Source: Octopus bimaculoides (Eukaryota). From it: DNA of 33,362 bases. This document shows, piece by piece, positions 4,133-31,205 of this stretch; the first letter of the stretch is position 1; every line of letters starts with the position of its first letter. A model generated the notes under the pieces. The model had not been told where the DNA came from and did no database searches. It saw nothing but the letters and a program-made list of their open reading frames with translations. The translations under genes and the position numbers were made by a program. The stretch covers positions 1,298,965 to 1,332,326 of the forward strand of contig NC_069009.1 in NCBI RefSeq assembly GCF_001194135.2, read 5' to 3'.

Positions 4133-4136
4133 ACAC

Positions 4137-4512: not shown

Positions 4513-4699
4513 ATTTGTGAAACATTTCACCTAATTAGTTCGTGGAATTGGTGCAAATGCTGTCTTGGATGAGAAGATGTTAAGCAGGTTTCCCACAGTA
4601 ACTGACACCATCAGTAGAGGGCAACATCATCTGAAAAGATAGAAAACAAGAATATTGTAAGACAGAGAGAATACTGAAAAATGCAAGAATACAATCTCT

Positions 4700-4861: not shown

Positions 4862-5242
4862 ATTTATTCTTCTATCACCAAAATATGCAGATGTTTATCT
4901 TTTCGTTTTTTCATGCAGCCGATTGGTAACAAAAACTTATATTTCTACTTCTATATTTCCATTAATTCTCTTCTTCACTGCTGTCTGAAGATTCTGCAAA
5001 CTCCTTTGCAATCCAAATTTAACAAGAAGGCAAAATTCATCTTGTAAACATTCCAAACCAGTGAAGCAGAGAAACGTTGCTATAAACCACAAAACTGTTA
5101 TATATGCTTTCTGTGTAGCGTCTTTCTTTAGTCTTTCACAGATTTTAAGTATTGCTGATGTAAAAACATCCATAGATGCCAATATCACCAGATAATCTGA
5201 AGTTATAGTAAAAAAAAAAAAGAAAAAAAAATGTAAGACATA

Positions 5243-5441
5243 ACTCTTTTATTATTTTACTCTTTTACTTGTTTCAGTCATTTGACTGTGGCCATGCTGG
5301 AGCACCGCCTTATTCTTTGGATGCCTAGTACTTATTCTATCGGTCTCTTTTGCCGAACCGCTAAGTTACGGGGACATAAACACACCAGCATCGGTTGTCA
5401 AGCGATGTTGGGGTGGGGTGGGACAAACACAGACACACATA
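5243..5441 (-). mobile_element. SINE family C 3' half (young)
   Basis: Near-identical to 27512-27720 apart from an internal deletion. Confidence 0.9.
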
Positions 5442-6794
5442 NNNNNNNNNNCTAAAGCAATTACAGCGTGGAAGACACATTTTAGCCATTTGCAAAACAC
5501 AGAAACTTAACATTAATCATTTGCCGCCGACGTTCTCGACACATCATCTGCTACCTGGTAAAAGAGCTATTTCCTATGGACAGATGATAGACACGAGTGA
5601 AGCACGCAAGCTGTGTTAGCTGTGCGTGTGGTTCCCACGTCAGCAAAATGAATAAGCATTCATAAAGGCAGCATGCAAAAAATTCCTGCGGAGAAAAATG
5701 AATTCGGATTTATCCAGCAGAAAATATTCAACTTCGTACCCCTAATTATCATCTCCGCCGTTTAAAAATGGAAAGCTTCATTAAAATTTTTATTTAAAAA
5801 TACTGCATATTTAAGAAGTTATGCAGAAACAAAGCCGGCAGAGGAACAATTCCATTGTGTCTGAAATGAAAAATTGAAATTCCGCATTTGCATAATTTTT
5901 AATCAGATTTATTTTTTTCAGAAGTTGATAGGCCAGTTTATGTTGCTACTGCCACAAACACATGGGAACTGAAAAGGAGAGAGAATTTAGTTGATTGTAT
6001 AATGAGATACAACTGTTTATATATATTTTTTAATTAGGACGCAGATGGCGCGATCAACTTACCAAAAAGAAAGCCATGAATTTTCGAGGGGGAAAAAAAA
6101 AGTGCAACGAAGGAGGGTTGAGAGACAATGAATCTTAGCTCACATTCACCTTTTTTTTCTTCTTTGATCTTAAGAATCGTAATCTACAAAGCCAAAAATA
6201 TACACATCCGAAGAATTTTTTTTCATTTTTCTACACTAGATAATTTCCGATTTTCTTGTGTGTGTTTCTGCGATCGTGTAGAAGGGTACTCAAATACACA
6301 TAATTTATCATAATATAATAGTTACATCGACAGCGTGTGGCGAGAAGAGGGAAATTTATTGTTTGAATGTGTTGTTGATCATAATACGGAGTGATCTATC
6401 AATTTTCATAAATAAAATAGTATTTATGATGGGTAAAATGTAAATTTTGAATATTGACTGGGTCATCATTGTAGTTGTTATGAGGTTTGTAGAAAGAGAA
6501 AACGATCTTTAAAAAAATAAATAAAATTATTGCTTTACTCACAATTTCATCTGACTCATTATCTTCGATACAATCATTTTCCACAGCAGTCTTGATACAA
6601 ACGCTGAAATTCACCATAGAAGTCGCTAATTTCTGACAATAGATTCTGCTACCACAGGTAGCAGGTACCCTGACGAAAGCCAGACTGAAGCAAAGAGGAA
6701 TGACTAAAACATGTAATGGTTTGCTTTAAATACCGAAACGAAATTTCTGGCATTGTACCAACATTAACAGCATTTATTCAGGCTACGCAGTATT

Positions 6795-6880
6795 TCTTCC
6801 AGTTTTTTTACGTTTTGAGCTCAAATCTCACCGAGGTCAGTTCTTCTTTTCATTTCTTCGGGGTCAATAAAATAGAGAAC
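6795..6880 (+). mobile_element. SINE family E fragment
   Basis: gttttgagctcaaatctcaccgaggtc..tttcatttcttcggggtcaataaa matches the reverse complement of 7158-7320. Confidence 0.6.
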
Positions 6881-7034
6881 CAGCCAAGAACGGAGGACGA
6901 GGGTATCGAATAAACCCCACTTCATCACTATTCTCGTTAGAAGCTATTATTAATCACTGTCCTCCTATTGGATAATTGAGGAAATAAATCTTACCAAGGG
7001 GAAAAACTTCTACAACTGACCTTGGCGAAGACGG

Positions 7035-7320
7035 TCAAATTTTGGGCTAGGGGCAAGTCGATTACATCGATTCCTAGGGCTTAACGGTACTTATTTAGTC
7101 GATCGAAAGGAATTTGCACTCAGAACGCTTCCTTACTACTACTAATAATAATGATAGTAATCCTTTTCTTACTATAGGCACAAAGCCTGAAATTTGGGCA
7201 GAGGGGACTAGTCTATTACATCGACCCAGTGTTTCACTGGTACTTTATTTATCGACCCGAAAAGTTGAAAGGTAAAGTTGACCTCAGCAGAATTTGAACT
7301 CTGATCGTAACGACGGACGT
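7035..7320 (-). mobile_element. Two adjacent SINE family E copies (7035-7130 internally deleted; 7158-7320)
   Basis: Both contain the gtcgattacatcga / ggtactt..tt.tcga / gaatttg.actc motifs also seen at 25420-25552. Confidence 0.75.
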
Positions 7321-8308
7321 TCAATAATAACGATGATTTCTTTCATTAAACGATTTGGTTAATTAATGTTTACTTTCACTCCCGGCCATGAAAATAAAAA
7401 AAAAGCAAGTGTGATAGGTGTTTTAAAAAAAATGTATATTACACGCGTATGAAAACCAAAATTTGCGCCAGCAAACCGGGGGTGAGGAAAAAACTCAGAA
7501 AATTCGCAAGATCCGATTTTTTCCCCTCGTAACTTTTAAGAAAATGGATATCTTTGGTAATCTTTCGTTACAAACAGATTACCCATCCTTTAGTGAAATT
7601 TTATATAAATACCTTTCAAACAGCATAGATTACGATTATAAAGAAATTTGTTTTTTCCGAAGAGAAAGAAATTCATAAATTCAATTTCTGTTTGAGTGCA
7701 AAGGAAAAAAGTTTAAAAAAAAAAATTTTTAGATACATTTATTTTTCGTTTGAGTAATAGAAAAAGGTTTTTAAAGAGATGGGATCTTGTTCAAAACGGG
7801 GGCACCAGTTTTCATTTATGTTTCATGTAGTGTTTTTGGTACCGAAAGACTTTCAAACTNNNNNNNNNNNNNNNNNNNNNNNNNNNNNNNNNNNNNNNNN
7901 NNNNNNNNNNNNNNNNNNNNNNNNNNNNNNNNNNNNNNNNNNNNNNNNNNNNNNNNNNNNNNNNNNNNNNNNNNNNNNNNNNNNNNNNNNNNNNNNNNNN
8001 NNNNNNNNNNNNNNNNNNNNNNNNNNNNNNNNNNNNNNNNNNNNNNNNNNNNNNNNNNNNNNNNNNNNNNNNNNNNNNNNNNNNNNNNNNNNNNNNNNNN
8101 NNNNNNNNNNNNNNNNNNNNNNNNNNNNNNNNNNNNNNNNNNNNNNNNNNNNNNNNNNNNNNNNNNNNNNNNNNNNNNNNNNNNNNNNNNNNNNNNNNNN
8201 NNNNNNNNNNNNNNTCTGAAAAACGTCAACGAACCAAACAGCTGTCAAGTTTATTTATTTATTTTTGTGGGTGGAAATGTACATTTCATGTCAGCATAAA
8301 GTGAAAGA

Positions 8309-8604
8309 GTGAAGGCGCAATGGCCCAGTGGTTAGGACAACGGACTCGCAGTCGGAGGGCCGCGGTTTCGATTCCCAGGCCGGGCATTGTGTGTGTTTAT
8401 TGAGCGAAAACACTTAAAGCTCCACGAGGCTCCAGCAAGGGGTGCTGGCGACCCCTGTTGTGTTCTTTCGCCCCAACTTTCTCTCACTCTTTCTTCCTGT
8501 TTCTTGAGTAACGCTGCGATGGACTGGTGTCCCTTCCAGCTGGGGGGGAACACATACGCCATAGAAACCGGGCCCATGAGTCTGGCTAGGCTTTAAAAGG
8601 GCGC
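8309..8604 (+). mobile_element. tRNA-derived SINE family A, tail X
   Basis: A box tggcccagtgg, B box gtttcgattcc. Body and tail are collinear with 23141-23445. Confidence 0.9.
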
Positions 8605-8700
8605 AAAAAGAAAACAAGAAAACAAGTGTAAAACATTTATTTGCAATTTTTCAGAAAGTATTTTATTTTAAGATTTTATGGAATTTATTTTCTAAATATA

Positions 8701-8836
8701 GGTGCAGGTGCAGCTTCCTAATCACATGCTTCTGGGTTCAGTCCCACTGTGTGGCATCTTAGGCAAGTGTCTTTTACTATAGCCTTGTGAGTGGATTTGG
8801 TAGATGAAAACTAAAAGAAGCCCGTCATGTATATAT
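8701..8836 (+). mobile_element. SINE family C 5' part
   Basis: ctgggttcagtcccactgtgtggcatcttaggcaagtgtc..gtgagtggatttggtaga. Confidence 0.8.
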
Positions 8837-9003
8837 CTATGGGCTAGCAAACTGCTGGCTGTTTGTGTTGGAACCCGTGGTGGTACCAGAGGGCTGCATG
8901 TGGCATAGCAATATTTATAAAACTATTATCCATTGCCAATAAGAAAAACAAAACTATTTGACTGACAAATAGGAAGGACTTCACTTAACACAACCTGATA
9001 TAC

Positions 9004-9076
9004 CTACTTTTCTGTATGAATCCCAACAAGTGTAGTTAAGTGGTCTTTCTGTGAGAATGATTTACCACAGAAATCA
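9004..9076 (-). pseudogene. Out-of-frame 15th zinc finger in the 3' UTR of the 9074 gene
   Basis: After the TGA, a shifted frame reads [23 protein letters not shown]. About 5 nt are missing relative to a canonical finger. Confidence 0.75.
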
Positions 9077-10354
9077 ATATGGTTTCTCTAATGTGTGAAT
9101 GCATTTGTGATCAGCTAAGTTATTTTCCTCAGAGCATGATTTACCACAAATATCACAATGATATGGTTTCTCTCCTGTATGAGTAAGTTTGTGTTTAGTT
9201 AAGTTACTTGCTCCAGAGAATGATTTACCACAGATTTCACAGTGATATGGTTTCTCTCCTGTATGAATACGTTTGTGTTTAGTTAAGTGATGCCTTTGAG
9301 AGAATGATTTATCACAGATCTCGCAGTGATATGGCCTCTCACCTGTATGAATACGTTTGTGAGAGACTAACTCGCCATTTTGAGTGAACGATTTGCCACA
9401 GGTATCACACTGGAATGGCTTCTCACCTGTATGAATGCGTTTGTGCACAGTCACATATGTTCTTGTCGACAACGATTTACCACAGATATCACAGTGATAT
9501 GGATTCACACCAGTATGAATACGCTTATGAGTAGCTAAGTTACCATTCTGAGAGAAAGATTTACCACAGACATCACAGTGATATGGTTTCTCTCCAGTAT
9601 GAATATGTCTGTGTTCAATTAACCGCTGCCTACGAGAGAATGAATTACCACAGATTTCACAGTGATATTGTCTCTCACCTGTATGAACACTTTTGTGTTT
9701 ACTTAAGTGACTAATATGAGAAAATGTTTTACCACAGATCTCACAGTCATATGGTTTTTCTCCTGTATGAAAACGTCTGTGTACAGTGAGATTAAACTTC
9801 ACAGAGAATGATTTACCACAGATATCACAATCGTATGGTTTCTCTCCCGTATGAACACGTTTGTGCGCAGTTAAAGTTTGTTTTTGGGAGAATGATTTTC
9901 CGCAGATATCACAGTGATATGGTTTCTCTCCAGTATGATTATGCATGTGCACATTCAACTGGTATTTCTGTGAGAATGATTCGCCACAGATACCACAGTG
10001 ATATGGTTTCTCACCTGTGTGAATACGTTTGTGTCGACTCAAGTGACTAACATGGGAGAATGATTTACCACAGATAACACAGTCATGTGGTTTCTCGCCC
10101 GTATGAAAACGTTTGTGTATCGTGAGGTTCCCTTTTACAGAGAAAGATTTACCACACATATCACAGCTGTATGGCTTTTCCCCTGTATGAGTACGGGTGT
10201 GCAAACTGAGTCTATATTTTTTAGAAAATATCTTGTTACAGATTTGACACTGGTATGTTATTTTTTTGGTTTCCTTTTTTTTACTGTCCAGAGAATCAGA
10301 ACTTTCAGATAGCATTTTAAATGTATCCTTCTCCTCACAAAATACATTTGCCAT
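9074..10354 (-). CDS. C2H2 zinc-finger protein, 426 aa, 14 tandem fingers, 33-aa leader
   Basis: Intact ORF with 14 CxxC-x12-HxxxH units and TGEKP-type linkers. Upstream splice acceptor tcttttcag|attatctg at about 10704. Confidence 0.93.
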   Translation of the reverse strand: MANVFCEEKDTFKMLSESSDSLDSKKKETKKITYQCQICNKIFSKKYRLSLHTRTHTGEKPYSCDMCGKSFSVKGNLTIHKRFHTGEKPHDCVICGKSFSHVSHLSRHKRIHTGEKPYHCGICGESFSQKYQLNVHMHNHTGEKPYHCDICGKSFSQKQTLTAHKRVHTGEKPYDCDICGKSFSVKFNLTVHRRFHTGEKPYDCEICGKTFSHISHLSKHKSVHTGERQYHCEICGNSFSRRQRLIEHRHIHTGEKPYHCDVCGKSFSQNGNLATHKRIHTGVNPYHCDICGKSLSTRTYVTVHKRIHTGEKPFQCDTCGKSFTQNGELVSHKRIHTGERPYHCEICDKSFSQRHHLTKHKRIHTGEKPYHCEICGKSFSGASNLTKHKLTHTGEKPYHCDICGKSCSEENNLADHKCIHTLEKPY

Positions 10355-10870
10355 AATTCTTCTTCTATGACAATATTCTCTTTTGTTTCCTTTGAGAGGA
10401 TTCCTTATAAATATTTTTATTTCTACAGCTATACTTCCACCAACTGTGATCTTTCAGTAGAGCTGTTATAAATGCTGCAGTATTGGTAATTCATATTTAA
10501 TTAGCAAAATCATCTTGCAGATATTTCAGGCAGTAATTAAAACAATTGTTGCCATTTGTCTTAGTTCCGAATTATTTTACAGTAATCCTGTCACAGGTTT
10601 ATATTGACAGAATTTTATCTTCTCTTTTGTTGTTGTGAGTTGATAACTATTGGTGATATAATCCAATGTACACAATGCTTTCATGCCAACGACAGCAGAT
10701 AATCTGAAAAGATGAACAGTTTAAGATATAGAGGCTACATAAAATGTATACACACACACATTTTATACATGTATATAAATATATATAAAGAATGAAAGAC
10801 GAATATATTTATTTCACCATTTGACATCCATATAATGATGATTATTTTGCAGCCTTTATCATCATTTATT

Positions 10871-11095
10871 GTGGAGGCGCAATGGCCCAGTGGTCAGGGC
10901 AGCGGACTCGCGGTTTCGATTCCCAGACAGGGCGTTGAAAGTGTTTATTGAACGAAATCAACTAAAGCTGCACGAGGCTCCGGCAGGGGATGGTGGCGAA
11001 CCCTGGTGTACTCTTTCACCACAACTTTCTCTTGATCCCTTCCCCAAAAATTTGAGGCCTTTTGTTTCCAATAGAAAGGATTATTATTATTGTTA
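10871..11095 (+). mobile_element. SINE family A head/body (to about 11033) joined to a family E 3' tail
   Basis: Family A head with a deletion in the tRNA region, then ccccaaaaatttgaggcctt..tagaaaggattattatt, the family E end. Confidence 0.75.
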
Positions 11096-11502
11096 CAACC
11101 TTAAAATAAATCTTTGTCAATTTAGCGTTTTCAGATGCAATCAGTGAACGAGCGCCCGACAAAGAGGGGCACATTAACATAATTACTACCAGTTATTTAT
11201 TCACCCATCATGTCCTTATGTCTCTCTTCTCGTCCAAAATGAGGTCAAACTAATCTTCACCTTCCTCATCAAACATCACATCCCTTTTTACTTTCCAGTA
11301 CAACACCCTCTATACGACAAAAGCTAAACCAAAAGTAATTTTCATCAATAAAGTTAAATCTTTTAATCAATAAATATAAACTGCTAATGGGTCTATAAAC
11401 AGATGATTTATTTATTGATTGATAAGTATTTACATATTTGTTCAGCTTCTTCAGTCTATTTTTGTATTTCTCCACGTTTTTGTTTCATTACTAGCCACAC
11501 AG

Positions 11503-11785
11503 ATAAGGTGGGGGAGCTGTAAGAATAGTTAGCACGCCGGACAAAATGCGAAAAGGCATTTCGTCCGTCTTTATGCTCAGAGTTCACATTCCGTCGGGGT
11601 CGATCAAATAACGGCAGAGGTCCCACCCACATAGGTTGGATTTTCTCCGTTTAACGGGGAATTTTCAAATGGTTTTTTTTTTAACTACACAAGCGTACCA
11701 GTTGATAACTGGAGTCGATGTAAACAAATAGCCCCAACCCTCACCAAGATATAAGACCTTGTGCCTATGGTAGAAAGAATTATTG
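11503..11785 (+). mobile_element. SINE family E with an internal insertion
   Basis: Head ggggagctg..gttagcacgccggacaaaatgc..gagttcacattccg..ggggtcgat, about 80 bp unrelated, then gtaccagttg..ctggagtcgat..ccttgtgcctatggtagaaagaattatt. Confidence 0.65.
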
Positions 11786-11918
11786 GCGAAAATAAATAAT
11801 ACGTACACTCGGTGTTTTGGATCAGAGTTTTTGTTACGCTGCAAACGGGTGGTGTACGTATTCTTTACCTCCGCCCGAATTATTATTATTATTACAGTTT
11901 TAAAGCAAACCTTAACCA

Positions 11919-12130
11919 ACTTACCGTTTTCAGATGTAACCAGTGACGATAAATAACCGGGTAATATTAAAATATGATTATTATTATACACTCAGTTGTT
12001 ACAGTCGATGTTTCCACTTTTCTCGTCGGCTGACCGTTCAAAATTGAGGTCACGCTAGTCTCCCGCTTCTTCACCTGATATCGCTTCCACTTTAACTTCC
12101 CGTTGCAACATTCTCTGCATCACGAAAGTT
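11919..12130 (-). other. Candidate non-coding first exon of the 9074 gene, ending at a consensus donor
   Basis: Minus strand reads aaacg|GTAAGT at 11919-11924. The region is relatively CpG-rich and lies upstream of the coding exon. No transcript evidence. Confidence 0.4.
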
Positions 12131-12900
12131 AAAACCAAAAGCGTTACTATTAATACAGTTAATGTTTTTAGCTAATATAAATAAAAAAAAAAAGGAAAGT
12201 ACTAACGGATTATAAGACAGATTCTTTAATAACTGACTTTCAAAACATGTTCGTATTCGTTCCGCTTTCGCAGGATACCCAATTTATTTTTGCGGCTTCC
12301 ACGCAGTTTTGTTAATTCCTACAAATTCATGCGTGACGCACTACTAACATATTTCACACACACATACACGGACACACACACAGGTAATCGTTCTGTAGGT
12401 CGGGGATAACATCGAAATAAATAAATTAGGGAATGAGTTTTTAGTTAACTTGCAAACTGAAATGTCGATCTGTTATTTTGGAAAACATACGATCGTCGAT
12501 TACATTTTATATAAAGTAAATCGTTGTCAAATGAGTGTAAAGCGGCGTAAATAATTACTAACAAATACTTCTCAAGCCTTATGGCTAAGGCCAATATCAT
12601 GTAATTAATTACTAAAATGGGAGAAAAGCCGCGTAACTAATTTATAAAATGAGTGCCAAGCAGCGTATTCAATTAGTGAAATCGGAGTAATGCAGCATAA
12701 TTAATTTTAGTTTAGATGTGTCCGTCCGATTCTGTTATCCTGCGTACCAAATTCAACCAACCTGGTACCATCTTTCTGCCAGTGATGGTGATAAAAGCTA
12801 TGGCGGAGACGTAACCCCCTCCCTCCTCCTACTTAATTTTTTTTTTTTTACAGAAACCCACGTTTTCGGCTATGTGGATTCCGATTCTAAAAAAAAAAAA

Positions 12901-13532
12901 AAATCTTCCACCAAACCTTAGTCACAATTTATGTTCCTAACACTAGCTTAATGACAACTTAATTCTTTGTTATATTTAAAATGAATTGAAAGAAATACAG
13001 AACATCTCAACAGAAATATGGTAACAAAAAGGTTAAAATATATAATAGAGAAACAATTCTTAACTCTTTTGATACCAACCTCACTGAAACCGCATCTGGT
13101 TCTGTTGTACAAATGTCTTGTTTTCACAAGTTTTGAATGAAAATCTTCCACCAAAGCTTAGTCACAAATTATGTTCCTAACACCAGCTTAATGATAACTA
13201 AGTTACTTTACTAAATTCTTTGTTATATCGAAAATTAACTGAGAGAAACACAGAGCATCGCAGCAGAAATATAGTAACAAAAAAGTTAAAGTCACCATGA
13301 TATTTTTAACCTTTTTAATATAAATCTGGCTGAAACCGCCTCTGTCTTTGTAGTACAAATGTCTTGTTTCCGTAAGTTTTGAATTAAAATCTTCCACCAA
13401 AGCTTAGTCACAATTTATGTTCCTAACACTAGCTGAATGATAACTAAGTTATTTTACTAAATTCTTTGTTATATTTAAAGTAATTGAAAGAAACAGAGCA
13501 TCTCAAAATAAATGCAGTAACGAAAGGGTTAA
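12901..13532. mobile_element. Three same-orientation copies of a ~225-bp MITE (family G) with TTAACC(C)TTT..AAAGGGTTAA ends
   Basis: Copies at 12901-13036 (5' truncated), 13060-13289 and 13306-13532 share aaatcttccaccaaa.cttagtcacaa.ttatgttcctaacac. The termini are piggyBac-like. Confidence 0.8.
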
Positions 13533-15049: not shown

Positions 15050-15339
15050 ATGCATAGTAACTTTGCCATTTTGAGAGAATGATTTACTACAGATATCACA
15101 GCGATATGGCTTATCTTGTGTGAATATGTTTATGTTTAATTAAGCAATCTTTCGTAGAGAATGATTTATCACAGACATCACAGTCACTTGGCTTCTCTCT
15201 CATATGAATAAGTTTGAGTTTAATTATGATATCCTTTTGAGAGAAAGATTTACCACAGGTATTACATTGATATAGTTTCTCACCTGTATGAATGAATTTG
15301 TTTGTATTTAAGCTGCATTTGTCAGAGAACGATTTCCTA
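15050..15339 (-). pseudogene. Out-of-frame relic fingers 16-19 behind the stop of the 15337 gene
   Basis: The shifted frame reads [72 protein letters not shown], a copy of fingers 10-12 with extra lesions. Confidence 0.85.
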
Positions 15340-16713
15340 CGTGTCACGCTCATATGGTTTCTCCCTTGTATGAACACATTTGTGTCTGGTTAAGGTACCA
15401 TTTTGAGAGAAAGATTTACCACAGATATTGCAGTGATATGGCATTTCTCCTGTATGAGTACGTTTGTGTTCAGTTACATGATGGTTTTGAGTGAATGATT
15501 TACCACAGATATCACACTGATATGGTTTCTCTCCTGTATGAATACGTTTGTGAATAGTTAAATTTACTATTTGTGAGAATGCTTTGTCACAGATAACGCA
15601 CTGATATGGTTTCTCTCCTGTGTGAATACGTTTATGTTTAATTAAGCAATCTTTCGTAGAGAATGATTTACTACAGATATCACAGTCACTTGGCTTCTCC
15701 TTCATATGAATAAGTTTGTGTTTAATTATGAGATCCTTTTGAGAGAAAGATTTACCACAGGTATTACATCGATATGATTTCTCACCTGTATGAATGAAGT
15801 TGTGTGTATTTAAGCTGCATTTGTCAGAGAATGCCTTACCACAGATATCACACTGATATGGTTTCTCCCCTGTATGAACACGTTTATGCCTGGTTAAAGC
15901 ACCAGTTTGAGAGAAAGATTTACCACAGATATTGCAGAAATATGGCATCTCTCCTGTATGAGTACGTTTGTGAACAGTTACTTTACTACTTTGAGTGAAT
16001 GATTTACCACAGATATCACACTGATATGGCTTCTCTCCTGTATGAATACGTTTGTGAATAGTTAAATTTACTATTTGTGAGAATGCTTTATCACAGATAT
16101 CACACTGATATGGTTTCTCTCCTGTGTGAATACGTTTGTGAGTTGCTAATTCACAATTTTCAGAGAATGATTTACCACAAATGTCACAATGATATGGCAT
16201 CTCTCCTGTATGAATATATTTGTGCTTTGTTAATTTACTACTTTCAAAAAATGATTTACCACAGATATCACAATGAAATTGTCTCTCTCCCGTATGAATA
16301 TGTTTGTGTCTAGTTAAATTAGTTAATTGTGAGAATGCTTGATCACAGATATCACAGCGATATGGTTTCTCTCCTGTATGAACACGCTTGTGTCTAGTTA
16401 AGGTACTATTCTGAGTGAAGGATTTACCACAGATATCACACCGATATAGTTTCTCTCCTATATGACTATGTTTGTGTTCAGTTACTTTACTTTTCTGAGA
16501 GAATGATTTACCACAGACATCACAGTGATATTGCTTCTTTCCTTTGTGAATACATCTGTGAGTAACATAGTTACTTTTCTCTGAAAATGACATTTTACAG
16601 ATACCACATTGGTACGACGTTGTTCCTGTATCATTTGGCATCTCATTTGTAAAATCAATCCTTTTAGACTGTGATTCACATTTAGCCTTGTCCTTACACA
16701 ATTCACTTTCCAT
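15337..16713 (-). CDS. C2H2 zinc-finger protein, 458 aa, 15 tandem fingers, 33-aa leader
   Basis: ORF with 15 complete fingers, truncated by a 2-nt deletion at the start of finger 16. Confidence 0.92.
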
Positions 16714-17415: not shown

Positions 17416-17739
17416 GTGAAGGTACGTGGCTTAGTGGTTAGGATATTCAGCTCACAATCATAAGGTCACGAGTTCAATTCCTGGCAGTGTGTTGTGTCCT
17501 TGAGTAAGACACTTAATTTCATGTTGCTCCAGGCCACTCAGCAGATAAGAATGAGTTGTACCTGTAATTCAAAGGAGCAGCTTTATTACAGTATGTGTCA
17601 CCCTGAATCTCCCTGAGTACTATGTTAAGAGTATATGTGTCTGTGGAGTGTTCAGACACATGTGTATGAATTACACGAGCAGGCTGTTTCATTAATCACA
17701 TCGAATGGAACCCTTGCTGTTGTAACCGATGGAGTGCCA
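17416..17739 (+). mobile_element. tRNA-derived CORE-type SINE (family B head, tail Y)
   Basis: A box tggcttagtgg, B box gagttcaattcc, CORE-like tgtgttgtgtccttgagtaagacactta. The tail from gttgtacctgtaattcaaag to ggagtgcca is shared with 18063-18438. Confidence 0.8.
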
Positions 17740-18041: not shown

Positions 18042-18062
18042 ATTACTGTCTTATATTACATT

Positions 18063-18438
18063 GTGGAGGCGCAATGGCTCAGTGGTTAGGGCAGCGGACT
18101 CGCGGTTTCGATTCCAAGACTGGGCGTTGTGAGTGTTTATTGAGCGAAAACACCTAAAGCTCCACGAGGCTCCAGCAGGGGATGGTGGCGAACCCTGCTG
18201 TACTCTTCCACCACAACTTTCTCTCTCACTCTTACTTCCTGTTTCTGTTGTACCTGTAATTCAAAGAGTGAGCCTTGTCACTCTGTGTCACGCTGAATAT
18301 CCCCGAGAACTACGTTAAGGGTACACGTGTCTGTGGAGTGCTCAGCCACTTACACGTTAATTTCACGAGCAGGCTGTTCCGTTGATCGGATCGACTGGAA
18401 CCCTCGACGTCGTAAGTGACGGAGTGCCAACAACAACA
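18063..18438 (+). mobile_element. tRNA-derived SINE family A, tail Y, (CAA)n end
   Basis: A and B boxes, family A body, tail shared with 17416-17739, ends tgccaacaacaaca. Confidence 0.9.
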
Positions 18439-18485
18439 TATATTACATTTTATAAACAATAAATCACAATAATTTTGAATTTTTG

Positions 18486-18907
18486 GGTACTACTAAAGCA
18501 GCGCGGATCCGAACGCGCAGTCGCGCGTCCGCGCTAGCTAGTATTGAGTGGTCGATCCTAACCCTAACCCTAACCCTAACCCGCGTGTGCAAATGAATAC
18601 GTGTTTAGGGTTAGGGTTAGGATCGACCACTCACGACTAGCTAGCGCGGCACTATCATGCTATTAGCTGTCAGAAGTGAAAGTGCTCCCTGCTAGTGAAG
18701 TATCTGTCTGTCTGCCTGCCTGTTGCTGGTCTGTCGATTCTTTGGCTACTGACAGCTAATACCATGACTGACCGGAGCGAGCTATATGTCTGTCTGTCTG
18801 TCTCTCTATCACTCTATCTCTCTTTCCCCCCTCCCTTTAAAACGCGTCAGTTATCTCTCGCCTTCTCTCTCTCTATCTCTCTCTTTCTATATCTATACCA
18901 TTACCTC

Positions 18908-18938
<31 letters not shown>

Positions 18939-19407
18939 ATCTATCTATCTATTACTCGAAAGTTCGCGCGTCCGCGCTAGCTAGTCGTGAGTGGTCGATC
19001 CTGTTATTTTTAAACTTCAAACTTCATTTGTTTTCTATTTTGATAAATTCTCTCTGTTGAAAATTATATTTTTATATTTTAAATAATTTGCAATTTCAGG
19101 AAATATGTTTTTATATTAAATTTGTGTTTTCTACTCACGACTAGCTAGCGCGGATGCGCGAACTTTCGAGTAATAGATAGATAGATAGAGAGAGAGACAG
19201 ACAGACAGACAGACATATAGCTCGCTCCGGCCAGTCATGGTATTAGCTGTCAGTAGCCAAAGAATCGACAGGCCAGCAACAGGCAGACAGACAGATACTT
19301 CACTAGCAGGCAGTGAGCACTTTCACTTCTGACAGGTAATAGCATGATAGTGCCGCTAGCGCGGACGCGCGACTGCGCGTTCGGATCCGCGCTGCTTTCG
19401 TAGTACC
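18486..19407. mobile_element. Non-autonomous foldback DNA transposon, Merlin-like, with 8-bp TSD
   Basis: Termini GGTACTAC..GTAGTACC are flanked on both sides by AATTTTTG (18478-18485 and 19408-19415). The inverted arms align over about 270 bp with about 5 substitutions. No transposase ORF. Confidence 0.85.
18557..18621. repeat. Inverted telomere-type repeats: (CCCTAA)~4 and (TTAGGG)~3
   Basis: cctaaccctaaccctaaccctaaccc at 18557-18582 and ttagggttagggttagg at 18605-18621. Confidence 0.95.
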
Positions 19408-19697
19408 AATTTTTGTTGACATTCTTCGTTTCTATGTGGCCCTTTGGCCTTGTACTTGTGATCGTTGTTTGACGTAAATAATAAACAAATTTGACTTACT
19501 CCTTCAGGTGGTGTCAAGATACTTACAAAGAAGAAAAGGACGGAAAATACGTCTTCGTAACTCAAACAAGCAGGAACATTTAGGTTGTAGTGGCTACCGG
19601 AGACGAGATTCGAACCTACAGTATCCACAGCAAAAAGAAAAAAAAAAGCATAAAAGAACACTCTTCTTTGTCCACGAACAGACATAGTCTGCACCTT

Positions 19698-19710: not shown

Positions 19711-20934
19711 TCTTTCAAAGTCATCGCTTCAAATCATTAATGTTTGAACGTCTGTCGAATAATTGCTATAACGAAATCGTTGCATAGTTTTCATTATGTT
19801 ATATTCGAACGCAAGGGTACCTTAATTATCAACACAAATTTTAATTAACGAGATAATAATTAAATCCAAGCACGTGAGGATGTAACATGAGTTGTCCTCC
19901 CTTACTGAGTAGTAATGCGTGCGCAGTATCAGAGTGGTGCTCGTTTTGTTTTATCCTTTCCCAGTTACCATCTCAGCACGTTTGATAACAATATCCTTTA
20001 TGCGTCGTATCCCTAATTATTACTACTACTACTTTACACAGACTATAGTACGTTCCTTTATGAAACATTTCTGTAAGTATTGTAGTTTCTTTTTTTAAAT
20101 ATTAAAAAGTATTTCATTCACGAAAGTATTAAATGCGAACGAACTTTCAGGCAGCGGGGCTGGAATATCGCCCAATAAGTTGGATTTTTCTCTGCCTTGG
20201 CTGGGATTTTTCAAATTTTTTCCCCATCACACACTTGGTATAACGATGGAAACGTTTCACGAAACGGTCTTGAAAATTTATGATTGTTTTTACTGCCGGA
20301 ACGAAAGAAATCCAATTTATTTATGTAGACGGACTTTTGAATTAGCTATCCCCGTAAGTTGGAATTTTTCCAATTTAGTTGGGATTATTTTTCAACTTTT
20401 ATTTTTTTGTATCAGATATTTTAAAACGACAGGAAAAGAAAAAGCTTTATAAAATTTTTAACACACCATCTTTGCCCCAATCCATTTTCTCCCGGTAAAT
20501 ATTTCGTAAAGGACGCGTTCGTACCTCGGTGTGAAATAACCTTTTTTCACGAGTTTTTTTCGAGTGTATTCAACGTATCTGACCTCCACCCGCCGCAAGT
20601 CGCTTTTTTCCGGAGAAGAAAGTTGGGATAGGGGTCAAAAAATTATTTCACAGCGAAATATCGGCGGCTCCTTTATCGCAAATAGGTGTTACATGGTAGC
20701 AGGGCGTGCTCACATTCGTTGAAAGTACTGACATAACCTGGAAAAGAAAAACAAAACTCCGTTGGTGGGAAACTNNNNNNNNNNNNNNNNNNNNNNNNNN
20801 NNNNNNNNNNNNNNNNNNNNNNNNNNNNNNNNNNNNNNNNNNNNNNNNNNNNNNNNNNNNNNNNNNNNNNNNNNNNNNNNNNNNNNNNNNNNNNNNNNNN
20901 NNNNNNNNNNNNNNNNNATCACACCAGGGTACGA

Positions 20935-21695: not shown

Positions 21696-22967
21696 ATGGA
21701 AAATGAATTGTGCGAGAACAAGATTGAATGTAATGCAGATTTTCAAAGGAGTGATTCTCCTGATGATGTGATGAAAGAAATGGGTAAAATATCGTACCAA
21801 TGTGATATCTGTGAGAAGACATTTTCTCAAAAATGTCGACTCACTGCACACAGCCGTATTCATACAGGAGAGAAGCCATATCACTGTAATATCTGTGGTA
21901 ACTCATTCTCTCACAAAGGCAACTTAACATCTCACCAACGTATTCACAGTGGTAGCAATCTATATCAGTGTGATATCTGTGATAAATCATTCTATCAAAA
22001 GGGTCACCTTATTAATCACCAGCGAATTCATACAGAAGAAAAACCATTCAACTGTGATGTCTGTGGTAAATCATTCTCTCAGAAAGGTAATCTCACGACG
22101 CACAACCATATTCATACAGGAGAGAAGCCATTTCACTGTAATATTTGTGGTAAATCATTCTCTCAGAAATACTATTTAATCAATCACCAACGCACTCATA
22201 CGGGAGAGAAACCATACTGTTGTGATACCTGTGGTAAATCATTCTCCCAAAGAAACAATCTGATTGTGCACAGACGCATTCATACAGGGAAGAAGTTGTA
22301 TCAGTGTTCAGTGTGTGGTAAATCGATCTCTGGGACAAGTAATTTAACTAAACACATACTCACTCATACAGGAGAGAAGCCATATCACTGTGACATCTGT
22401 GGTAAATCATTCTCTTGTGGAAACACCTTAACTAGGCACAAACGTATTCATACTGGAGAGAAACCATATCAGTGTGATGCCTGTGGTAAATCATTCTCTG
22501 ATAACGGTGGCTTAACTGTACATAGACGTATTCACACAGGAGAGAAACCATATCACTGTGATATATGTGATAAGTCATTTGCTCAGAATACCGAGTTGGC
22601 TACTCACAAACGTATTCACACAGGTGAGAAGCCATATCACTGTGAAACTTGTGGCAAATCATTCTCTCGCAAATACAACTTAATTTCCCACCAACGTATT
22701 CATACAGGAGAAAAACCGTATTGCTGTGATATCTGTGGTAAATCGTTCTCTCAGAGAAACAATTTGATAGTACACAAACGCACACATACAGGTGAGAAGC
22801 TGTATCAGTGTTCTGTTTGTGGTAAGTCGTTCTGTCAAAAAGGTGAGCTGACTTCTCATGAACGTATTCATACAGGTGAGAAACCATATCATTGCGAAAT
22901 CTGTGGGAAAGCCTTCTCGCAAAGACATCACTTAACTACGCACATAGGTGTTCATACAGAAAAGTAA
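21696..22967 (+). CDS. C2H2 zinc-finger protein, 423 aa, 14 tandem fingers, 33-aa leader
   Basis: Intact ORF. An in-frame TAA at 21654 supports this ATG. Splice acceptor ttattatttcag|ataatcc at 21372. Confidence 0.94.
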   Translation: MENELCENKIECNADFQRSDSPDDVMKEMGKISYQCDICEKTFSQKCRLTAHSRIHTGEKPYHCNICGNSFSHKGNLTSHQRIHSGSNLYQCDICDKSFYQKGHLINHQRIHTEEKPFNCDVCGKSFSQKGNLTTHNHIHTGEKPFHCNICGKSFSQKYYLINHQRTHTGEKPYCCDTCGKSFSQRNNLIVHRRIHTGKKLYQCSVCGKSISGTSNLTKHILTHTGEKPYHCDICGKSFSCGNTLTRHKRIHTGEKPYQCDACGKSFSDNGGLTVHRRIHTGEKPYHCDICDKSFAQNTELATHKRIHTGEKPYHCETCGKSFSRKYNLISHQRIHTGEKPYCCDICGKSFSQRNNLIVHKRTHTGEKLYQCSVCGKSFCQKGELTSHERIHTGEKPYHCEICGKAFSQRHHLTTHIGVHTEK

Positions 22968-23140: not shown

Positions 23141-23445
23141 GTGGAGGCGCAATGGACCAGTGGTTAGGGCAGCGGACTCTCGGTCATAAGATTGCGGTTT
23201 CGATTCCCAGACTGGGCGTTGTGAGTGTTTATTGAGCGAAAACACCTAAAGCTCCACGAAGCTCCAGCAGGGGGTGGTGGTGACCCCTATTGTACTCTTT
23301 CGCCCCAACTTTCTCTCACTCTTTCTTCCTGTTTCTTGAGTAACGCTGCGATGGACTGGCGTCCCGTCCAGCTGGGGAGGAACACATACACCATAGAAAC
23401 CGGGAAACCGAGCCCATGAGCCTGGCTAGGTTTTGAAAAGGCGAC
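23141..23445 (+). mobile_element. tRNA-derived SINE family A, tail X
   Basis: Complete tRNA-like head, collinear with 8309-8604. Confidence 0.9.
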
Positions 23446-25658: not shown

Positions 25659-27008
25659 TCATCCTGTATGAGTCCGATTATGTTTAGTTAAACTTCTTCT
25701 TTGAGAGAATGATTTACCACAAATATCACAGTGATATGGTTTCTCAACTGCATGAATATGCTTGTGTTGAGTTAAGTAACCAGCATGAGACAATGGTTTA
25801 CCACACACATCGCACAGATGTTTCTCTCCCCGATGGGTGTTTGTGTGAATAGTTAGGCTACCTTTATGAGAGAATGATTTATCACAGACATCACAATAAA
25901 ATGGTTTCTCACCTGTGTGAATGCGTATGTGGGAAGTTAAATGATCCTTTCGAAGGAATGATTTACCACAAATATCACAGCGATATGGTTTTACCTCTGA
26001 ATGAATACGTTTGTGTTTAGTCAAGTTACCATTCAGAGTGAATGATTTACCACAGACAGCACAGTGATATGGTTTCTCTCCTGTATGAATGGTCTTGTGT
26101 CTTTCCAAGACAGTAGCATCAGAGAATGATTTACCGCAGGTATCACAGTGATATGGCTTCTCTCCTGTATGAATGCGTTTGTGTCTAGTCAAGACTGTAG
26201 TGTCACAGAATGATTTACCACAAATATCACAGTGATATGGTTTCTCTCCAGTATGAATATATTTGTGTTTATTTAAATTGCCATTATGACAGAAAGCCTT
26301 CCCACAGATGTCACAGTGAAATGGCTTCTCTTCAGCATGAATGTATTTGTGTCTATTTAAGTCACTTCTTTGAGTGAATGATTTACCACAGGTATCGCAG
26401 TGATGTTGTTTCTCTCCTGTATGAATGTGCATGTGTTTAGTGAAGCGGCCTTCATCAGAGAATGATTTATCACAGAAATCACAGTGGTATGGTTTTTCCA
26501 CTGTATGAATACGTGTATGTTTAGTTAAGGTACTTTTTTCTGAGAATGATTTACCACAGAAATCACAGAAATATGGCTTTTCCCCTGTATGAATGCGTAT
26601 GTGACTAGTTAAGTGATCACTCTGGGAAAATGATTGACCACAGACATCACAGTGATATGGCTTTTCTCCTGTATGAGTACGTTTGTGCCTAGATAAGGCA
26701 CCATTTCGAGAGAATGACTTATCACAGACATCACAATGATATGGTTTCTCTCCAGTGTGAATAAACTTATGTTTAGTTACACTGCTACTTTGAGAGAACG
26801 ATTTCCCACAGATATTACAGTGATATCGTTTCTCTCCTGTATGTATATTCTTGTGTTTAGTTAGGCTGCTCCTTTTAGAAAATGATTTACCACAGATATC
26901 ACAATGGTATGATGGTTTTCCTTTCTCAGTTTTTATATCATCAGGAAGGTCAATCTTTTTAGTCTCCGTTTCACATTTAACCTTGATCTCATTTAACTCA
27001 CATTCCAT
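25659..27008 (-). CDS. C2H2 zinc-finger protein, 449 aa, 15 tandem fingers, 33-aa leader
   Basis: Intact ORF with 15 fingers and one shortened linker (RGEK). Acceptor tcttaattatttcag|aatat at about 27366. Confidence 0.94.
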   Translation of the reverse strand: MECELNEIKVKCETETKKIDLPDDIKTEKGKPSYHCDICGKSFSKRSSLTKHKNIHTGEKRYHCNICGKSFSQSSSVTKHKFIHTGEKPYHCDVCDKSFSRNGALSRHKRTHTGEKPYHCDVCGQSFSQSDHLTSHIRIHTGEKPYFCDFCGKSFSEKSTLTKHTRIHTVEKPYHCDFCDKSFSDEGRFTKHMHIHTGEKQHHCDTCGKSFTQRSDLNRHKYIHAEEKPFHCDICGKAFCHNGNLNKHKYIHTGEKPYHCDICGKSFCDTTVLTRHKRIHTGEKPYHCDTCGKSFSDATVLERHKTIHTGEKPYHCAVCGKSFTLNGNLTKHKRIHSEVKPYRCDICGKSFLRKDHLTSHIRIHTGEKPFYCDVCDKSFSHKGSLTIHTNTHRGEKHLCDVCGKPLSHAGYLTQHKHIHAVEKPYHCDICGKSFSQRRSLTKHNRTHTG

Positions 27009-29583: not shown

Positions 29584-30717
29584 ATGGAAGACGTTAAGGA
29601 CTTGGACACTTCTACCACAACTGATTTTACCGATGTAGATTCAGCAGCATCGATTGACAGAGACGAGAACCCTTTATGGAGTGAAGTATTTATTAACCAA
29701 GCATCAACAAATGAAACTATCCCTGAATATTGCTGTGAGATTTGTGGGAAAACATTCAATTCAGAACAGGATTTCTTCACACATAAAGACGCACACAATA
29801 AGGAAAAACCATTCTATTGTGAAATATGTGGGAAATATTTTGCATATAACAGTTATTTTATAAGCCATCAAAGAATCCACACTGGAGAGAAGCCGTATCA
29901 TTGCGAAATATGTGAGAAATCTTTCACTCAGAATTCTCATCTTGTTATCCACATACGTAGTCATACAGGGGAGAAACTATTTCATTGTGAGATATGTAAT
30001 AAATCATTTGTCTCCAACAGTAATTTAACAAAACATAGGAGAATACACACCGGAGAAAAACCGTATCATTGTGAAATATGCTTCAAGTNNNNNNNNNNNN
30101 NNNNNNNNNNNNNNNNNNNNNNNNNNNNNNNNNNNNNNNNNNNNNNNNNNNNNNNNNNNNNNNNNNNNNNNNNNNNNNNNNNNNNNNNNNNNNNNNNNNN
30201 NNNNNNNNNNNNNNNNNNNNNNNNNNNNNNNNNNNNNNNNNNNNNNNNNNNNNNNNNNNNNNNNNNNNACACTGGAGAAAAACCATACCACTGTGACATA
30301 TGTGGGAAATCGTTTACTCAAAATTCTTGCCTTGTTATTCACACTCGTAGCCATTCTGGATTAAAACCATATCACTGTGAAGTGTGTGGGAAATCTTTTG
30401 TGGATAATAGTAATCTAAACAGACACAGACAAACACACGCTAAAGAAAAACTGTTCAACTGTAAAACTGTGGTAGAGACTAAGCCTTTTAACTCTGAAAC
30501 TTCGGTAGAAGCCAAGCCTTTTATCTCTGAGACTTTGGTAGAGGCTAAGCCTTTAAACTGTGAAACTTCAGTAGAGACTAAGCCTTTTAGCCATGAAACT
30601 TCAGAAGAGGCTAAACCTTTTAACCGTGAAACTTCGGTAGAAGCTAAGCCTTTAAACTGTGAAACTTCTGTTGAAGCCAAGGCTTTTAACTGTGAATCTT
30701 CGGTAGAGGCTGTCTAA
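29584..30717 (+). CDS. C2H2 zinc-finger protein with an acidic N-terminus, at least 6 complete fingers (gap inside) and a C-terminal 11-aa repeat
   Basis: Fingers flank an N gap (30089-30268), so length and finger number are unknown. Acceptor tttttgtctcag| lies just upstream at 29566. Confidence 0.85.
30448..30711 (+). repeat. Coding 33-bp minisatellite, 8 units (KPFNxETSVEA)
   Basis: Units aagcc(t)tttaac.gtgaaacttc.gtaga.gc. in frame up to GTC TAA. Confidence 0.92.
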
Positions 30718-30884
30718 TATGTTCATAAACAATGACTTCCACTACAAAAGGAAGGGACCAACTGCATTCACTCAATCTATAAGTAAATCATCATTATACA
30801 TAAGTGAGTACTGAGATGAATTAAACTGAGTTAATTACTATTCTATGATATATTTTATTGACACAAAACAGCACNNNNNNNNNN

Positions 30885-31205
30885 TAAACTGTGAAACTTC
30901 AGTAGAGACTAAGCCTTTTAGCCATGAAACTTCAAAAGAGGCTAAACCTTTTAACCGTGAAACTTCAGTAGAAGCTAAGCCTTTAAACTGTGAAACTTCT
31001 GTTGAAGCCAAGGCTTTTAACTGTGAATCTTCGGTAGAGGCTGTCTAATATGTTCATAAACAATGACTTCCACTACAAAAGGAAGGGACCAACTGCATTC
31101 ACTCAATCTATAAGTAAATCATCATTATACATAAGTGAGTACTGAGATGAATTAAACTGAGTTAATTACTATTCTATGATATATTTTATTGACACAAAAC
31201 AGCAC
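30885..31205 (+). repeat. 321-bp direct copy of 30554-30874 across a 10-N gap; probable assembly or haplotype duplication
   Basis: Identical by eye except for two G/A differences, and abutting the gap. Confidence 0.85.

What the first reader, a model, noticed from the sequence alone, without database searches (positions are those of the whole stretch)
18478..19415. Young 922-bp nested foldback transposon with an 8-bp TSD, Merlin-like, next to a ZNF first exon
Seen: exact TSD AATTTTTG on both sides and termini GGTACTAC. The CpG-rich arms (18486-18994, 19133-19407) differ by only about 5 substitutions plus microsatellite slippage. Each arm is itself a hairpin (tcatgctattagctgtcag / ctgacagctaataccatga), and the motif cgcgtccgcgctagc(tagtcgtgagtggtcgatcct) recurs in both orientations. 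Established: GG termini with 8-9-bp TSDs typify Merlin/IS1016 elements; MULE/foldback is the alternative. Inference: a recently active non-autonomous family with three levels of self-complementarity, lying about 90 bp inside the predicted first intron of the 15337 gene.
Basis: partly seen in the sequence, partly recalled or inferred. Interest (0 to 1): 0.8.

Follow-up and report, generated by a model that had tools for sequence, protein, structure and literature searches.

The report
Non-autonomous Merlin foldback transposon in octopus
The 922-bp palindromic insert is a real, transposase-less deletion derivative of a Merlin-superfamily DNA transposon in the Octopus bimaculoides genome, sitting upstream of a zinc-finger gene: a sound but ordinary piece of transposon annotation.

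Summary
The 922-bp element (18486-19407) has an exact 8-bp target-site duplication, AATTTTTG. Its termini are GGTACTAC.../...GTAGTACC. The two arms differ by 5 substitutions plus indels, and smaller palindromes are nested inside them.

The window is Octopus bimaculoides (GCA_001194135.2, CM046629.1), inside a C2H2 zinc-finger gene cluster.

The Merlin guess can now be tested by homology, and it passes.
- The AT-rich centre (19013-19133) is 99.2% identical to the sequence just downstream of a Merlin-type (DDE_Tnp_IS1595) transposase gene on another O. bimaculoides contig. A 93%-identical copy of the arm follows it there.
- In O. sinensis, a 2.3-kb element carrying the orthologous transposase is bounded by ~75-bp inverted repeats. 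These are homologous to this element's ends (GGTACTA...GCTAGCTAGTCGTGA..GTCGATCCT).
- The "recurring motif" is the inner part of that Merlin inverted repeat.
- Three copies of a second octopus Merlin family also have GG ends and perfect 8-bp duplications.

The element is therefore a non-autonomous Merlin deletion derivative with long foldback arms.

Not tested: copy number, an empty allele, the claimed position in an intron, and whether Repbase or Dfam already hold the family. I call it a new member of a known kind, of modest interest.

The parts
18478..18485 (.). Left target-site duplication, AATTTTTG
   Evidence: Identical to 19408-19415. Chance about 2.5e-5.
18486..18538 (+). Outer terminal inverted repeat, left ('T'): GGTACTACTAAAGCAGCGCGGATCCGAACGCGCAGTCGCGCGTCCGCGCTAGC. 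CpG observed/expected 1.73.
   Evidence: 52 of 53 complementary to 19355-19407. Homologous to both ends of the O. sinensis Merlin element, L006 9415-11751.
18529..18649 (.). Palindromic module found only in the left arm. It reads: inner end of T, then the S motif (TAGTATTGAGTGGTCGATCCT, 18539-18559), then (CCCTAA)4 at 18557-18582, a 22-nt spacer, (TTAGGG)~2.5 at 18604-18621, then S' (18619-18639), then GCTAGCGCGG.
   Evidence: Inverted repeat I5: 45-nt arms, 96%. TRF period 6, 100% matches. Absent from the right arm, where the junction reads CGCGCTA|GCGGCAC.
18650..18792 (+). Subterminal arm region B, left. It contains its own hairpin (18655-18673 / 18749-18767) and the conserved motif TGTCAGAAGTGAAAGT.
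   Evidence: Pairs with 19221-19354. 93% identical to L002 4413-4504. The motif is conserved in L006 9581-9629 / 11595-11643 and in L003.
18793..18911 (+). Block of 119 nt found only in the left arm: CT/CTGT/CTAT microsatellites plus unique sequence.
   Evidence: A gap in the arm-to-arm alignment. TRF rows for 18852-18952.
18912..18963 (+). Microsatellite stretch (CTGT)n(CT)n(CTAT)n shared by both arms, left copy
   Evidence: Pairs with 19162-19215.
18964..19002 (+). Inner copy of the Merlin inverted repeat's inner part: TCGCGCGTCCGCGCTAGC plus S (TAGTCGTGAGTGGTCGATCCT). Together with 18951-18963 (TATTACTCGAAAG) it resembles a shortened whole terminus.
   Evidence: Direct repeat D5, 95% to 18521-18559. 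Alignment A1. 85% to L006 9451-9489.
19003..19132 (+). AT-rich centre (17% GC). It is a remnant of the Merlin internal region that lies just 3' of the transposase gene.
   Evidence: 19013-19133 matches L002 4154-4274 at 120/121. That stretch begins 98 nt after the called stop codon of transposase P0124. 73-84% to L006 11407-11536.
19133..19161 (-). Inner S' (truncated to ACTCACGACTA) plus GCTAGCGCGGATGCGCGA
19162..19354 (-). Right arm: microsatellites plus B'
   Evidence: 19280-19354 is 93% identical to L002 4434-4504 in the same orientation, downstream of the transposase.
19355..19407 (-). Outer terminal inverted repeat, right (T'), ending ...GTAGTACC
19408..19415 (.). Right target-site duplication, AATTTTTG

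Best explanation
This is a non-autonomous, internally deleted member of a Merlin-superfamily (IS1016/IS1595-related DDE) DNA transposon family of Octopus.

The autonomous form has ~75-bp terminal inverted repeats (T+S: GGTACTA...GCTAGC-TAGTCGTGA..GTCGATCCT). Longer subterminal inverted regions follow, with a ~300-aa DDE_Tnp_IS1595 transposase between them.

In this copy everything from the left inner S motif to about 85-100 nt past the transposase stop codon has been lost. About 130 nt of the 3' internal region remain as the 'loop' between two long arms.

Inferred mechanism: a Merlin transposase supplied in trans bound the inverted repeats, cut the element out, and pasted it into AATTTTTG with an 8-bp staggered cut. 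Repair of that cut produced the duplication.

The motif that recurs in both orientations is the inner part of the Merlin inverted repeat. It is present as two inward-facing pairs. One pair brackets a telomere-type hexamer palindrome and the other brackets the loop.

Shown: the anatomy, the duplication, and homology to transposase-bearing Merlin elements in two species.
Inferred: mobilisation in trans, origin by deletion (for example abortive gap repair), and recent insertion.
For: 1. Species. The window is O. bimaculoides GCA_001194135.2 (L001 is identical to window 5337-26713). The same assembly accession carries the O. bimaculoides protein P0124.
2. Same-species autonomous-type copy. Window 19013-19133 is 99.2% identical (120/121) to L002 4154-4274. 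That stretch begins 98 nt after the called stop of P0124 (277 aa; PF12762 DDE_Tnp_IS1595, 62.7 bits against a cutoff of 27; the VEIDES, ISDLW and HIESLW blocks are present). Arm B' follows at 93% in the same order and orientation.
3. Sister-species element. L006 (O. sinensis) carries the 82%-identical transposase P0136 inside a 2337-bp element (9415-11751). Both of its ends align with this element's terminal 75 nt (el 1-75 against L006el 1-76, 75%, E 1e-10; S motif 85-93%). The B motif and the post-transposase region are collinear.
4. Published Merlin criteria are met. Merlin elements have inverted repeats of 24-462 bp, terminal 5'-GG and 8-9-bp duplications (PMC8101967). The same paper reports 191 Merlin-like proteins in O. 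bimaculoides.
5. Independent octopus Merlin copies behave the same way. Three 99%-identical copies of a second family (L003, L004, L005) start with GGCGATG and each has a perfect 8-bp duplication.
6. The duplication here is exact, the arms are 98.2% identical over aligned positions, and there is no long ORF with homologues.
Against: - Only this one complete copy with the T terminus was seen in O. bimaculoides, so copy number and family status were not measured.
- The one same-species transposase-bearing copy (L002) lacks a recognisable left arm. Its right arm ends at 4504, where it meets another repeat before the T terminus. Its ORF has a TGG>TGA stop 24 codons early.
- The O. sinensis element has no matching duplication (TTAACAAG against GGCTTTGG).
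- Terminal similarity between species is moderate (75%).
- No empty site could be examined.
Confidence: 0.87

Rival explanations
1. Same superfamily, but a composite built by nested transposition. On this view a short Merlin miniature element (18951-19174) and a telomere-repeat-bearing mini-element (18529-18649) each inserted into an older palindromic Merlin derivative. The alternative is that the arms were duplicated or symmetrised as a whole.
For: Both inner units are bracketed by inverted copies of the inner part of the inverted repeat (T-inner + S), in the correct outward-in orientation. Nested insertion of one Merlin derivative into another does occur in Octopus: a family-B miniature element sits inside the Merlin-A ORF at L006 10778-11249.
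Against: Neither inner unit has a direct target-site duplication. The flanks of 18951-19174 are (CTAT)n on one side and (ATAG)n on the other, which are mutual reverse complements, so the palindrome simply continues outward. The T-S junction GCTAGC|TAGTCGTGA is contiguous in the O. sinensis inverted repeat, so S is not an insert. The right arm's lack of the telomere-repeat module looks like a deletion between flanking GCTAGC repeats.
Confidence: 0.2
2. A genuine Merlin derivative, but an old, fixed and now immobile relic. The high arm identity would come from gene conversion within the element rather than from youth, so 'young and recently active' would be wrong.
For: - The only same-species transposase copy retrieved is truncated and carries a premature stop.
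- Arm B is only 93% identical between the two O. bimaculoides copies.
- An intact 8-bp duplication is weak evidence of age.
Against: - 120/121 identity of the loop to the transposase-linked copy.
- A perfect duplication.
- CpG observed/expected of 1.1-1.7 is retained, against a 0.63 background.
- A 2026 repeat annotation of O. vulgaris lists 2 Merlin families among recently active elements (PMC13282606).
Confidence: 0.3
3. An element of another superfamily that also makes 8-bp duplications (hAT, P, Zisupton, Novosib), or a MULE/Foldback-type element.
For: An 8-bp duplication alone is compatible with hAT. Long inverted arms resemble Drosophila FB elements.
Against: - The termini are not of the hAT type (own knowledge: YARNG).
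- Both the internal and the terminal sequence are homologous to elements that encode a DDE_Tnp_IS1595 (Merlin) transposase.
- No homology to any other transposase was seen.
Confidence: 0.03
4. An assembly artefact or a local inverted duplication, not a transposition product.
For: The assembly is a short-read draft with N gaps in the window. Palindromes can be artefacts.
Against: - There is no gap within about 1.3 kb of the element; the nearest are 7860-8214 and 20775-20917.
- The arms are asymmetric (517 and 275 nt) and diverged, not a perfect mirror.
- An exact 8-bp duplication flanks the element.
- The parts are found, independently assembled, on another contig and in another species.
Confidence: 0.03

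Closest known systems
Merlin superfamily of eukaryotic DNA transposons (Feschotte 2004), related to bacterial IS1016/IS1595
   Same: Terminal 5'-GG, an 8-bp target-site duplication, and an inverted-repeat length within the published 24-462 bp range for the outer repeats. There is direct sequence homology to octopus elements that encode a DDE_Tnp_IS1595 transposase.
   Different: No transposase. The arms (517 and 275 nt) are asymmetric and contain nested palindromes, microsatellites, a second internal copy of the inner inverted repeat, and a (CCCTAA)n/(TTAGGG)n hairpin.
The Merlin copy at O. bimaculoides LOC106883699 (LGKD02092233.1) and its O. sinensis relative LOC115231130 (VCDQ01004827.1)
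   Same: The same family. The loop is 99% identical to the O. bimaculoides copy and arm B is 93% identical. The T+S inverted repeat is 75-93% identical to the O. sinensis element. The order of parts is collinear.
   Different: Those copies carry the transposase gene, although both are damaged: one by a premature stop and a missing left arm, the other by a miniature-element insertion in the ORF. The window copy has lost the gene.
MITEs and other non-autonomous deletion derivatives of inverted-repeat transposons
   Same: Non-coding, bounded by the parent's inverted repeats, flanked by the parent's duplication length, and presumably mobilised in trans.
   Different: At 922 bp it is larger than a typical MITE. 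Copy number is unknown.
Drosophila Foldback (FB) elements and other foldback transposons (e.g. Tetris, PMC4079207)
   Same: Long inverted arms with internal repeats and a short central loop. It works like a foldback in that almost the whole element can snap back on itself.
   Different: No sequence or transposase relationship. FB elements make 9-bp duplications and their arms are arrays of tandem repeats (own knowledge). Here the arms are Merlin subterminal sequence.

Membership tests
Merlin superfamily | Target-site duplication of 8 or 9 bp | tested here: met
   An exact 8-bp AATTTTTG on both sides. Criterion from PMC8101967. Three copies of another octopus Merlin family also have 8-bp duplications.
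Merlin superfamily | Terminal inverted repeats (24-462 bp) with conserved terminal 5'-GG | tested here: met
   GGTACTAC... / ...GTAGTACC. The outer repeat is 53 nt, 52/53 complementary. The overall arms extend to 275 nt or more.
Merlin superfamily | [quoted passage not shown] | tested here: met
   The element itself is non-coding. Its centre and arm are 99% and 93% identical to sequence contiguous with transposase P0124 (PF12762, 62.7 bits) in L002. Its ends are homologous to the inverted repeats around P0136 in L006.
Merlin superfamily | Multiple copies sharing the same ends (a family), with an intact autonomous partner | not testable with these tools
   No octopus genome could be searched by DNA. 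Only loci reached through proteins were available. Metagenome and viral scans gave 0 hits.
MITE | Short (usually under ~800 bp), non-coding, high copy number | tested here: inconclusive
   Non-coding is met. At 922 bp the size is slightly above the usual range. Copy number was not measurable.
hAT superfamily | 8-bp duplication together with hAT-type termini and a hAT transposase in autonomous relatives | tested here: not met
   The duplication length fits. The termini are GG... and the autonomous relatives encode a Merlin-type transposase, not a hAT one.
Foldback (FB) / MULE-related elements | 9-bp (8-11 bp) duplication, arms built of tandem repeat arrays, and association with an FB/MuDR-type transposase | tested here: not met
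   The foldback architecture is present. All detectable homology is to Merlin elements. The FB criteria come from my own knowledge, not from a tool.

The most novel reading that the evidence does not exclude
The telomere-type hexamer hairpins may mark a recurrent interaction between palindromic transposon DNA and telomere-repeat addition or telomeric targets in octopus. In the window, (CCCTAA)4...(TTAGGG)2.5 is bracketed by Merlin inner inverted-repeat motifs. A degenerate (TTAGGG)n...(CCCTAA)n palindrome lies at the centre of an unrelated inverted-repeat structure in L002. Alternatively, or in addition, a foldback with a stem of about 275 bp transcribed inside a zinc-finger gene's 5' intron would give a long double-stranded RNA. 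That could be a substrate for the unusually active cephalopod ADAR editing or for small-RNA pathways.
Probability: 0.07. Interest if true: 0.55.

Novelty: new member of a known kind. Interest (0 to 1): 0.3.

Why it matters
This gives a homology-based classification of a structurally odd repeat in a genome whose DNA transposons are poorly curated.

- It links a foldback-type non-autonomous element to its Merlin parent.
- It defines that parent's inverted repeats (about 75 bp, GGTACTA...GTCGATCCT) in two Octopus species.
- It adds evidence that Merlin elements with 8-bp duplications have been mobile in Octopus, including near the expanded C2H2 zinc-finger clusters.

For genome annotation it explains a CpG-rich palindrome just upstream of a zinc-finger gene as a transposon, not a regulatory island or an artefact. 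It does not change any general understanding of transposons.

Tried and rejected
1. Exact-pattern scans with the terminus and the S motif: 0 hits in JGI metagenomes (2 scans) and 0 in viral contigs. These collections do not hold octopus DNA.
2. Using the element's 121-aa ORF as a protein bait for other copies. The word-indexed search gave nothing. The exhaustive representative search gave only 4 low-complexity hits, with E no better than 6e-5. Exact look-ups of the 121-aa ORF and of the 122-aa junction ORF gave nothing.
3. Searching with the 458-aa zinc-finger protein to find orthologous loci, and so an empty site, in other Octopus species. The result was swamped by vertebrate zinc-finger proteins. 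The best octopus hit was 49% identical, so no orthologue was found.
4. Looking for a paralogous empty site or a second copy inside the window: none.
5. Rfam over the whole window: no hit.
6. Look-up of P0130, a second O. bimaculoides transposase of the same family: not on record.
7. L007, an ENA contig with a 64%-identical Merlin fragment: similarity in the coding region only, so uninformative.
8. Reading L002 4505-4550 (..CTTTCGGTACC) as a variant terminus. Rejected: it belongs to a different inverted-repeat family, also present at L002 5603-5661 and at window 7782-7859.

Full report
**What is there.** The window is from Octopus bimaculoides. The 458-aa zinc-finger ORF at 15337-16713 is encoded on GCA_001194135.2, CM046629.1 at about 1.30 Mb. 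The fetched locus is base-for-base identical to window 5337-26713. The same assembly accession carries a protein that NCBI names as O. bimaculoides. The surroundings are AT-rich (37% GC). They hold a cluster of single-ORF C2H2 zinc-finger genes and several N gaps.

**The observation.**
- The element is 922 bp (18486-19407). It starts GGTACTAC, ends GTAGTACC, and is flanked by exactly 8 bp of direct repeat, AATTTTTG. The chance of this is about 2.5e-5.
- The outer 53 nt are 52/53 complementary.
- Aligning the left arm with the reverse complement of the right arm gives 266 matches and exactly 5 substitutions.
- It also shows a 109-nt palindromic module and a 119-nt block present only on the left, and two 4-nt indels. 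So the differences are not only microsatellite slippage.
- Each arm contains its own hairpin (18655-18673 / 18749-18767).
- The motifs CGCGTCCGCGCTAGC and TAGTCGTGAGTGGTCGATCCT recur on both strands, against 0 expected.
- As a single strand the element folds at -382 kcal/mol, z = -43.
- CpG observed/expected is 1.1 in the element, 1.73 in the terminus and 0.63 in the window.
- There is no other copy, and no paralogous empty site, in the window.

**Finding relatives.** Octopus genomes cannot be searched by DNA with these tools. Pattern scans of metagenomes and viral contigs were empty. Baiting with the element's ORFs failed. The way in was through the literature. PMC8101967 gives the Merlin criteria: inverted repeats of 24-462 bp, terminal 5'-GG and 8-9-bp duplications. 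It also reports 191 Merlin-like proteins in O. bimaculoides. I took one of them (KOF79200.1) from the paper's supplement and used it as a seed. This returned 134 DDE_Tnp_IS1595 proteins. From these I fetched genomic loci.

**The decisive result.**
- *Same-species copy (L002).* L002 is O. bimaculoides contig LGKD02092233.1. It carries transposase P0124 (277 aa; PF12762, 62.7 bits against a cutoff of 27; D, D and E blocks present).
- *What follows the transposase in L002.* Starting 98 nt after the called stop, L002 4154-4274 is 120/121 identical to window 19013-19133, the AT-rich 'loop'. After a microsatellite stretch, L002 4413-4504 is 93% identical to arm B', in the same order and orientation as in the window.
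- *Sister-species element (L006).* L006 is O. sinensis contig VCDQ01004827.1. It carries the 82%-identical transposase P0136 inside a 2337-bp element (9415-11751).
- *Ends of the L006 element.* Its left end reads GGTACTATTTAAGAAGAGTGGTCCCGGTGCGCGCACTCGCGTATCGGTGCTAGCTAGTCGTGACTAGTCGATCCT. The reverse complement of its right end begins GGTGCTACTTGAGAAC... and ends ...TAGTCGATCCT. Both align with the window's terminal 75 nt: positions 1-75 against 1-76, 75%, E 1e-10, with the S motif at 85-93%.
- *Collinearity.* The subterminal motif TGTCAGAAGTGAAAGT and the post-transposase region are collinear as well.

The chain is therefore closed. The window's ends match Merlin inverted repeats. The window's centre matches Merlin 3' internal sequence. 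The arms match Merlin subterminal sequence.

**Anatomy, read with this key.** From left to right:
- the duplication (18478-18485);
- T (18486-18538);
- S, (CCCTAA)4, a spacer, (TTAGGG)2.5, S', then the inner end of T' (a 121-nt palindrome, 18529-18649, left arm only);
- B with its hairpin, then microsatellites;
- a second, shortened copy of the repeat (TATTACTCGAAAG-TTCGCGCGTCCGCGCTAGC-S, 18951-19002);
- a 130-nt remnant of the 3' internal region (19003-19132);
- the mirror image of this (S' truncated, microsatellites, B');
- T' directly, without the telomere-hexamer module;
- the duplication (19408-19415).

The 'recurring motif' is thus the inner part of the Merlin inverted repeat. The T-S junction is contiguous in O. 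sinensis. S is therefore ancestral repeat sequence and not an insert. The right arm most likely lost S-hexamers-S' by deletion between the flanking GCTAGC repeats. The inner units have no direct duplications, because their flanks are mutual reverse complements. Nested palindromes are shown; nested transposition is not.

**Mechanism.**
- Shown: the structure, the duplication and the homology.
- Inferred from established knowledge of cut-and-paste DDE transposons: the element arose from an autonomous copy by internal deletion, was mobilised in trans by the family's transposase binding T+S, and integrated with an 8-bp staggered cut.
- Independent support that octopus Merlins behave this way: three 8.7-kb copies of a second family are 99.2-99.6% identical (L003 and L005 in O. 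sinensis, L004 in O. vulgaris). All start with GGCGATGTTTCG and have ~355-bp inverted repeats. Each has a perfect 8-bp duplication: GCAAATCT, CAAGGCTT and GAAACTTT.
- A 472-bp non-coding derivative of that second family sits inside the Merlin-A ORF in L006.

**Age.** Several points favour a fairly recent insertion: the perfect duplication, 98.2% arm identity, 99.2% loop identity to the transposase-linked copy, and retained CpGs. However, arm identity can be maintained by conversion within the element. Arm B is only 93% identical between the two copies. The only same-species transposase copy I could fetch lacks a left arm, and its right arm ends at another repeat before T. It also has a TGG>TGA stop 24 codons early. 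A 2026 annotation of O. vulgaris lists two Merlin families among recently active elements (PMC13282606). 'Recently active' remains plausible but unproven.

**Gene context.** The element lies 1.77 kb upstream of the ATG of the minus-strand zinc-finger ORF. On the minus strand there are GTAAGT donor-like sites at 19499 and about 19527. No transcript or annotation evidence was available, because only the coding ORF is called. The right flank has no paralogue in the window. On this point I cannot tell.

**Comparison and novelty.** The element works like a foldback and MITE-type non-autonomous element, and it is a member of the Merlin superfamily by every criterion I could test. hAT, FB/MULE and the other families with 8-bp duplications are excluded by the homology. 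Merlin in octopus is already documented at the protein and annotation level (PMC8101967, PMC13282606). I found no description of this family or of its foldback derivatives. Repbase and Dfam could not be consulted. Verdict: a new member of a known kind. Interest is modest at 0.3.

**Unexplained.** Telomere-type hexamers recur at hairpin tips, here and at L002 5896-6020.

Noticed in passing
L003 4265-12990, L005 4252-12991 (O. sinensis); L004 ~3888-12938 (O. vulgaris): A second octopus Merlin family. The units are 8.7 kb and 99.2-99.6% identical, with ~355-bp inverted repeats starting GGCGATGTTTCG. Each has a perfect 8-bp target-site duplication (GCAAATCT, CAAGGCTT, GAAACTTT). All three encode an identical 305-aa transposase, across two species. 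This looks recently active.
   Followed up: partly
L006 10778-11249: A 472-bp non-coding derivative of that second family's inverted repeat (44-nt perfect termini). It is inserted in the Merlin-A transposase ORF and splits it. The flanks are CAAAAGAG and CAGAAGAG (7/8).
   Followed up: partly
L003 ~360-3100: A very large nested palindrome in O. sinensis. It contains fragments of Merlin-A: a piece of transposase coding sequence and the TGTCAGAAGTGAAAGT arm motif, each in both orientations.
   Followed up: no
window 18557-18621; L002 5896-6020: Telomere-type hexamer arrays sit at the centre of palindromes in two unrelated inverted-repeat structures. The window has (CCCTAA)4...(TTAGGG)2.5, and L002 has a degenerate (TTAGGG)n...(CCCTAA)n. 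The origin is unexplained.
   Followed up: partly
L002 4054-4059 vs L006 ~11307: The O. bimaculoides transposase ORF (P0124) ends at a TGA where the O. sinensis copy has TGG. Another 24 codons follow in frame, so the annotated 277-aa protein is C-terminally truncated.
   Followed up: yes
window 7782-7859 (beside N gap 7860-8214): A copy (88-97%) of another inverted-repeat family, also seen at L002 4505-4563 and 5603-5661. It contains ...TTTGAAAGTCTTTCGGTACCAAAAACAC....
   Followed up: no
window 18060-18246, 10868-11032, 23194-23336, 8361-8504; 18247-18429 and 17555-17739: Interspersed (SINE-like) repeats lie immediately left of the element. The Merlin derivative inserted 56 bp beyond the end of one of them.
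   Followed up: no
window 9074-10354(-), 15337-16713(-), 21696-22967(+), 25659-27008(-), 29584-30717(+): Five single-ORF C2H2 zinc-finger genes (377-458 aa) with 84-bp finger periodicity. The last has a 33-bp tandem repeat (30457-31205) beginning in its C-terminal coding part and running past the stop, and an N gap inside the ORF.
   Followed up: no
P0124 residues ~42-70: A CxxC...CxxxC motif lies N-terminal to the DDE domain, suggesting a zinc-chelating DNA-binding region. [quoted passage not shown]
   Followed up: no
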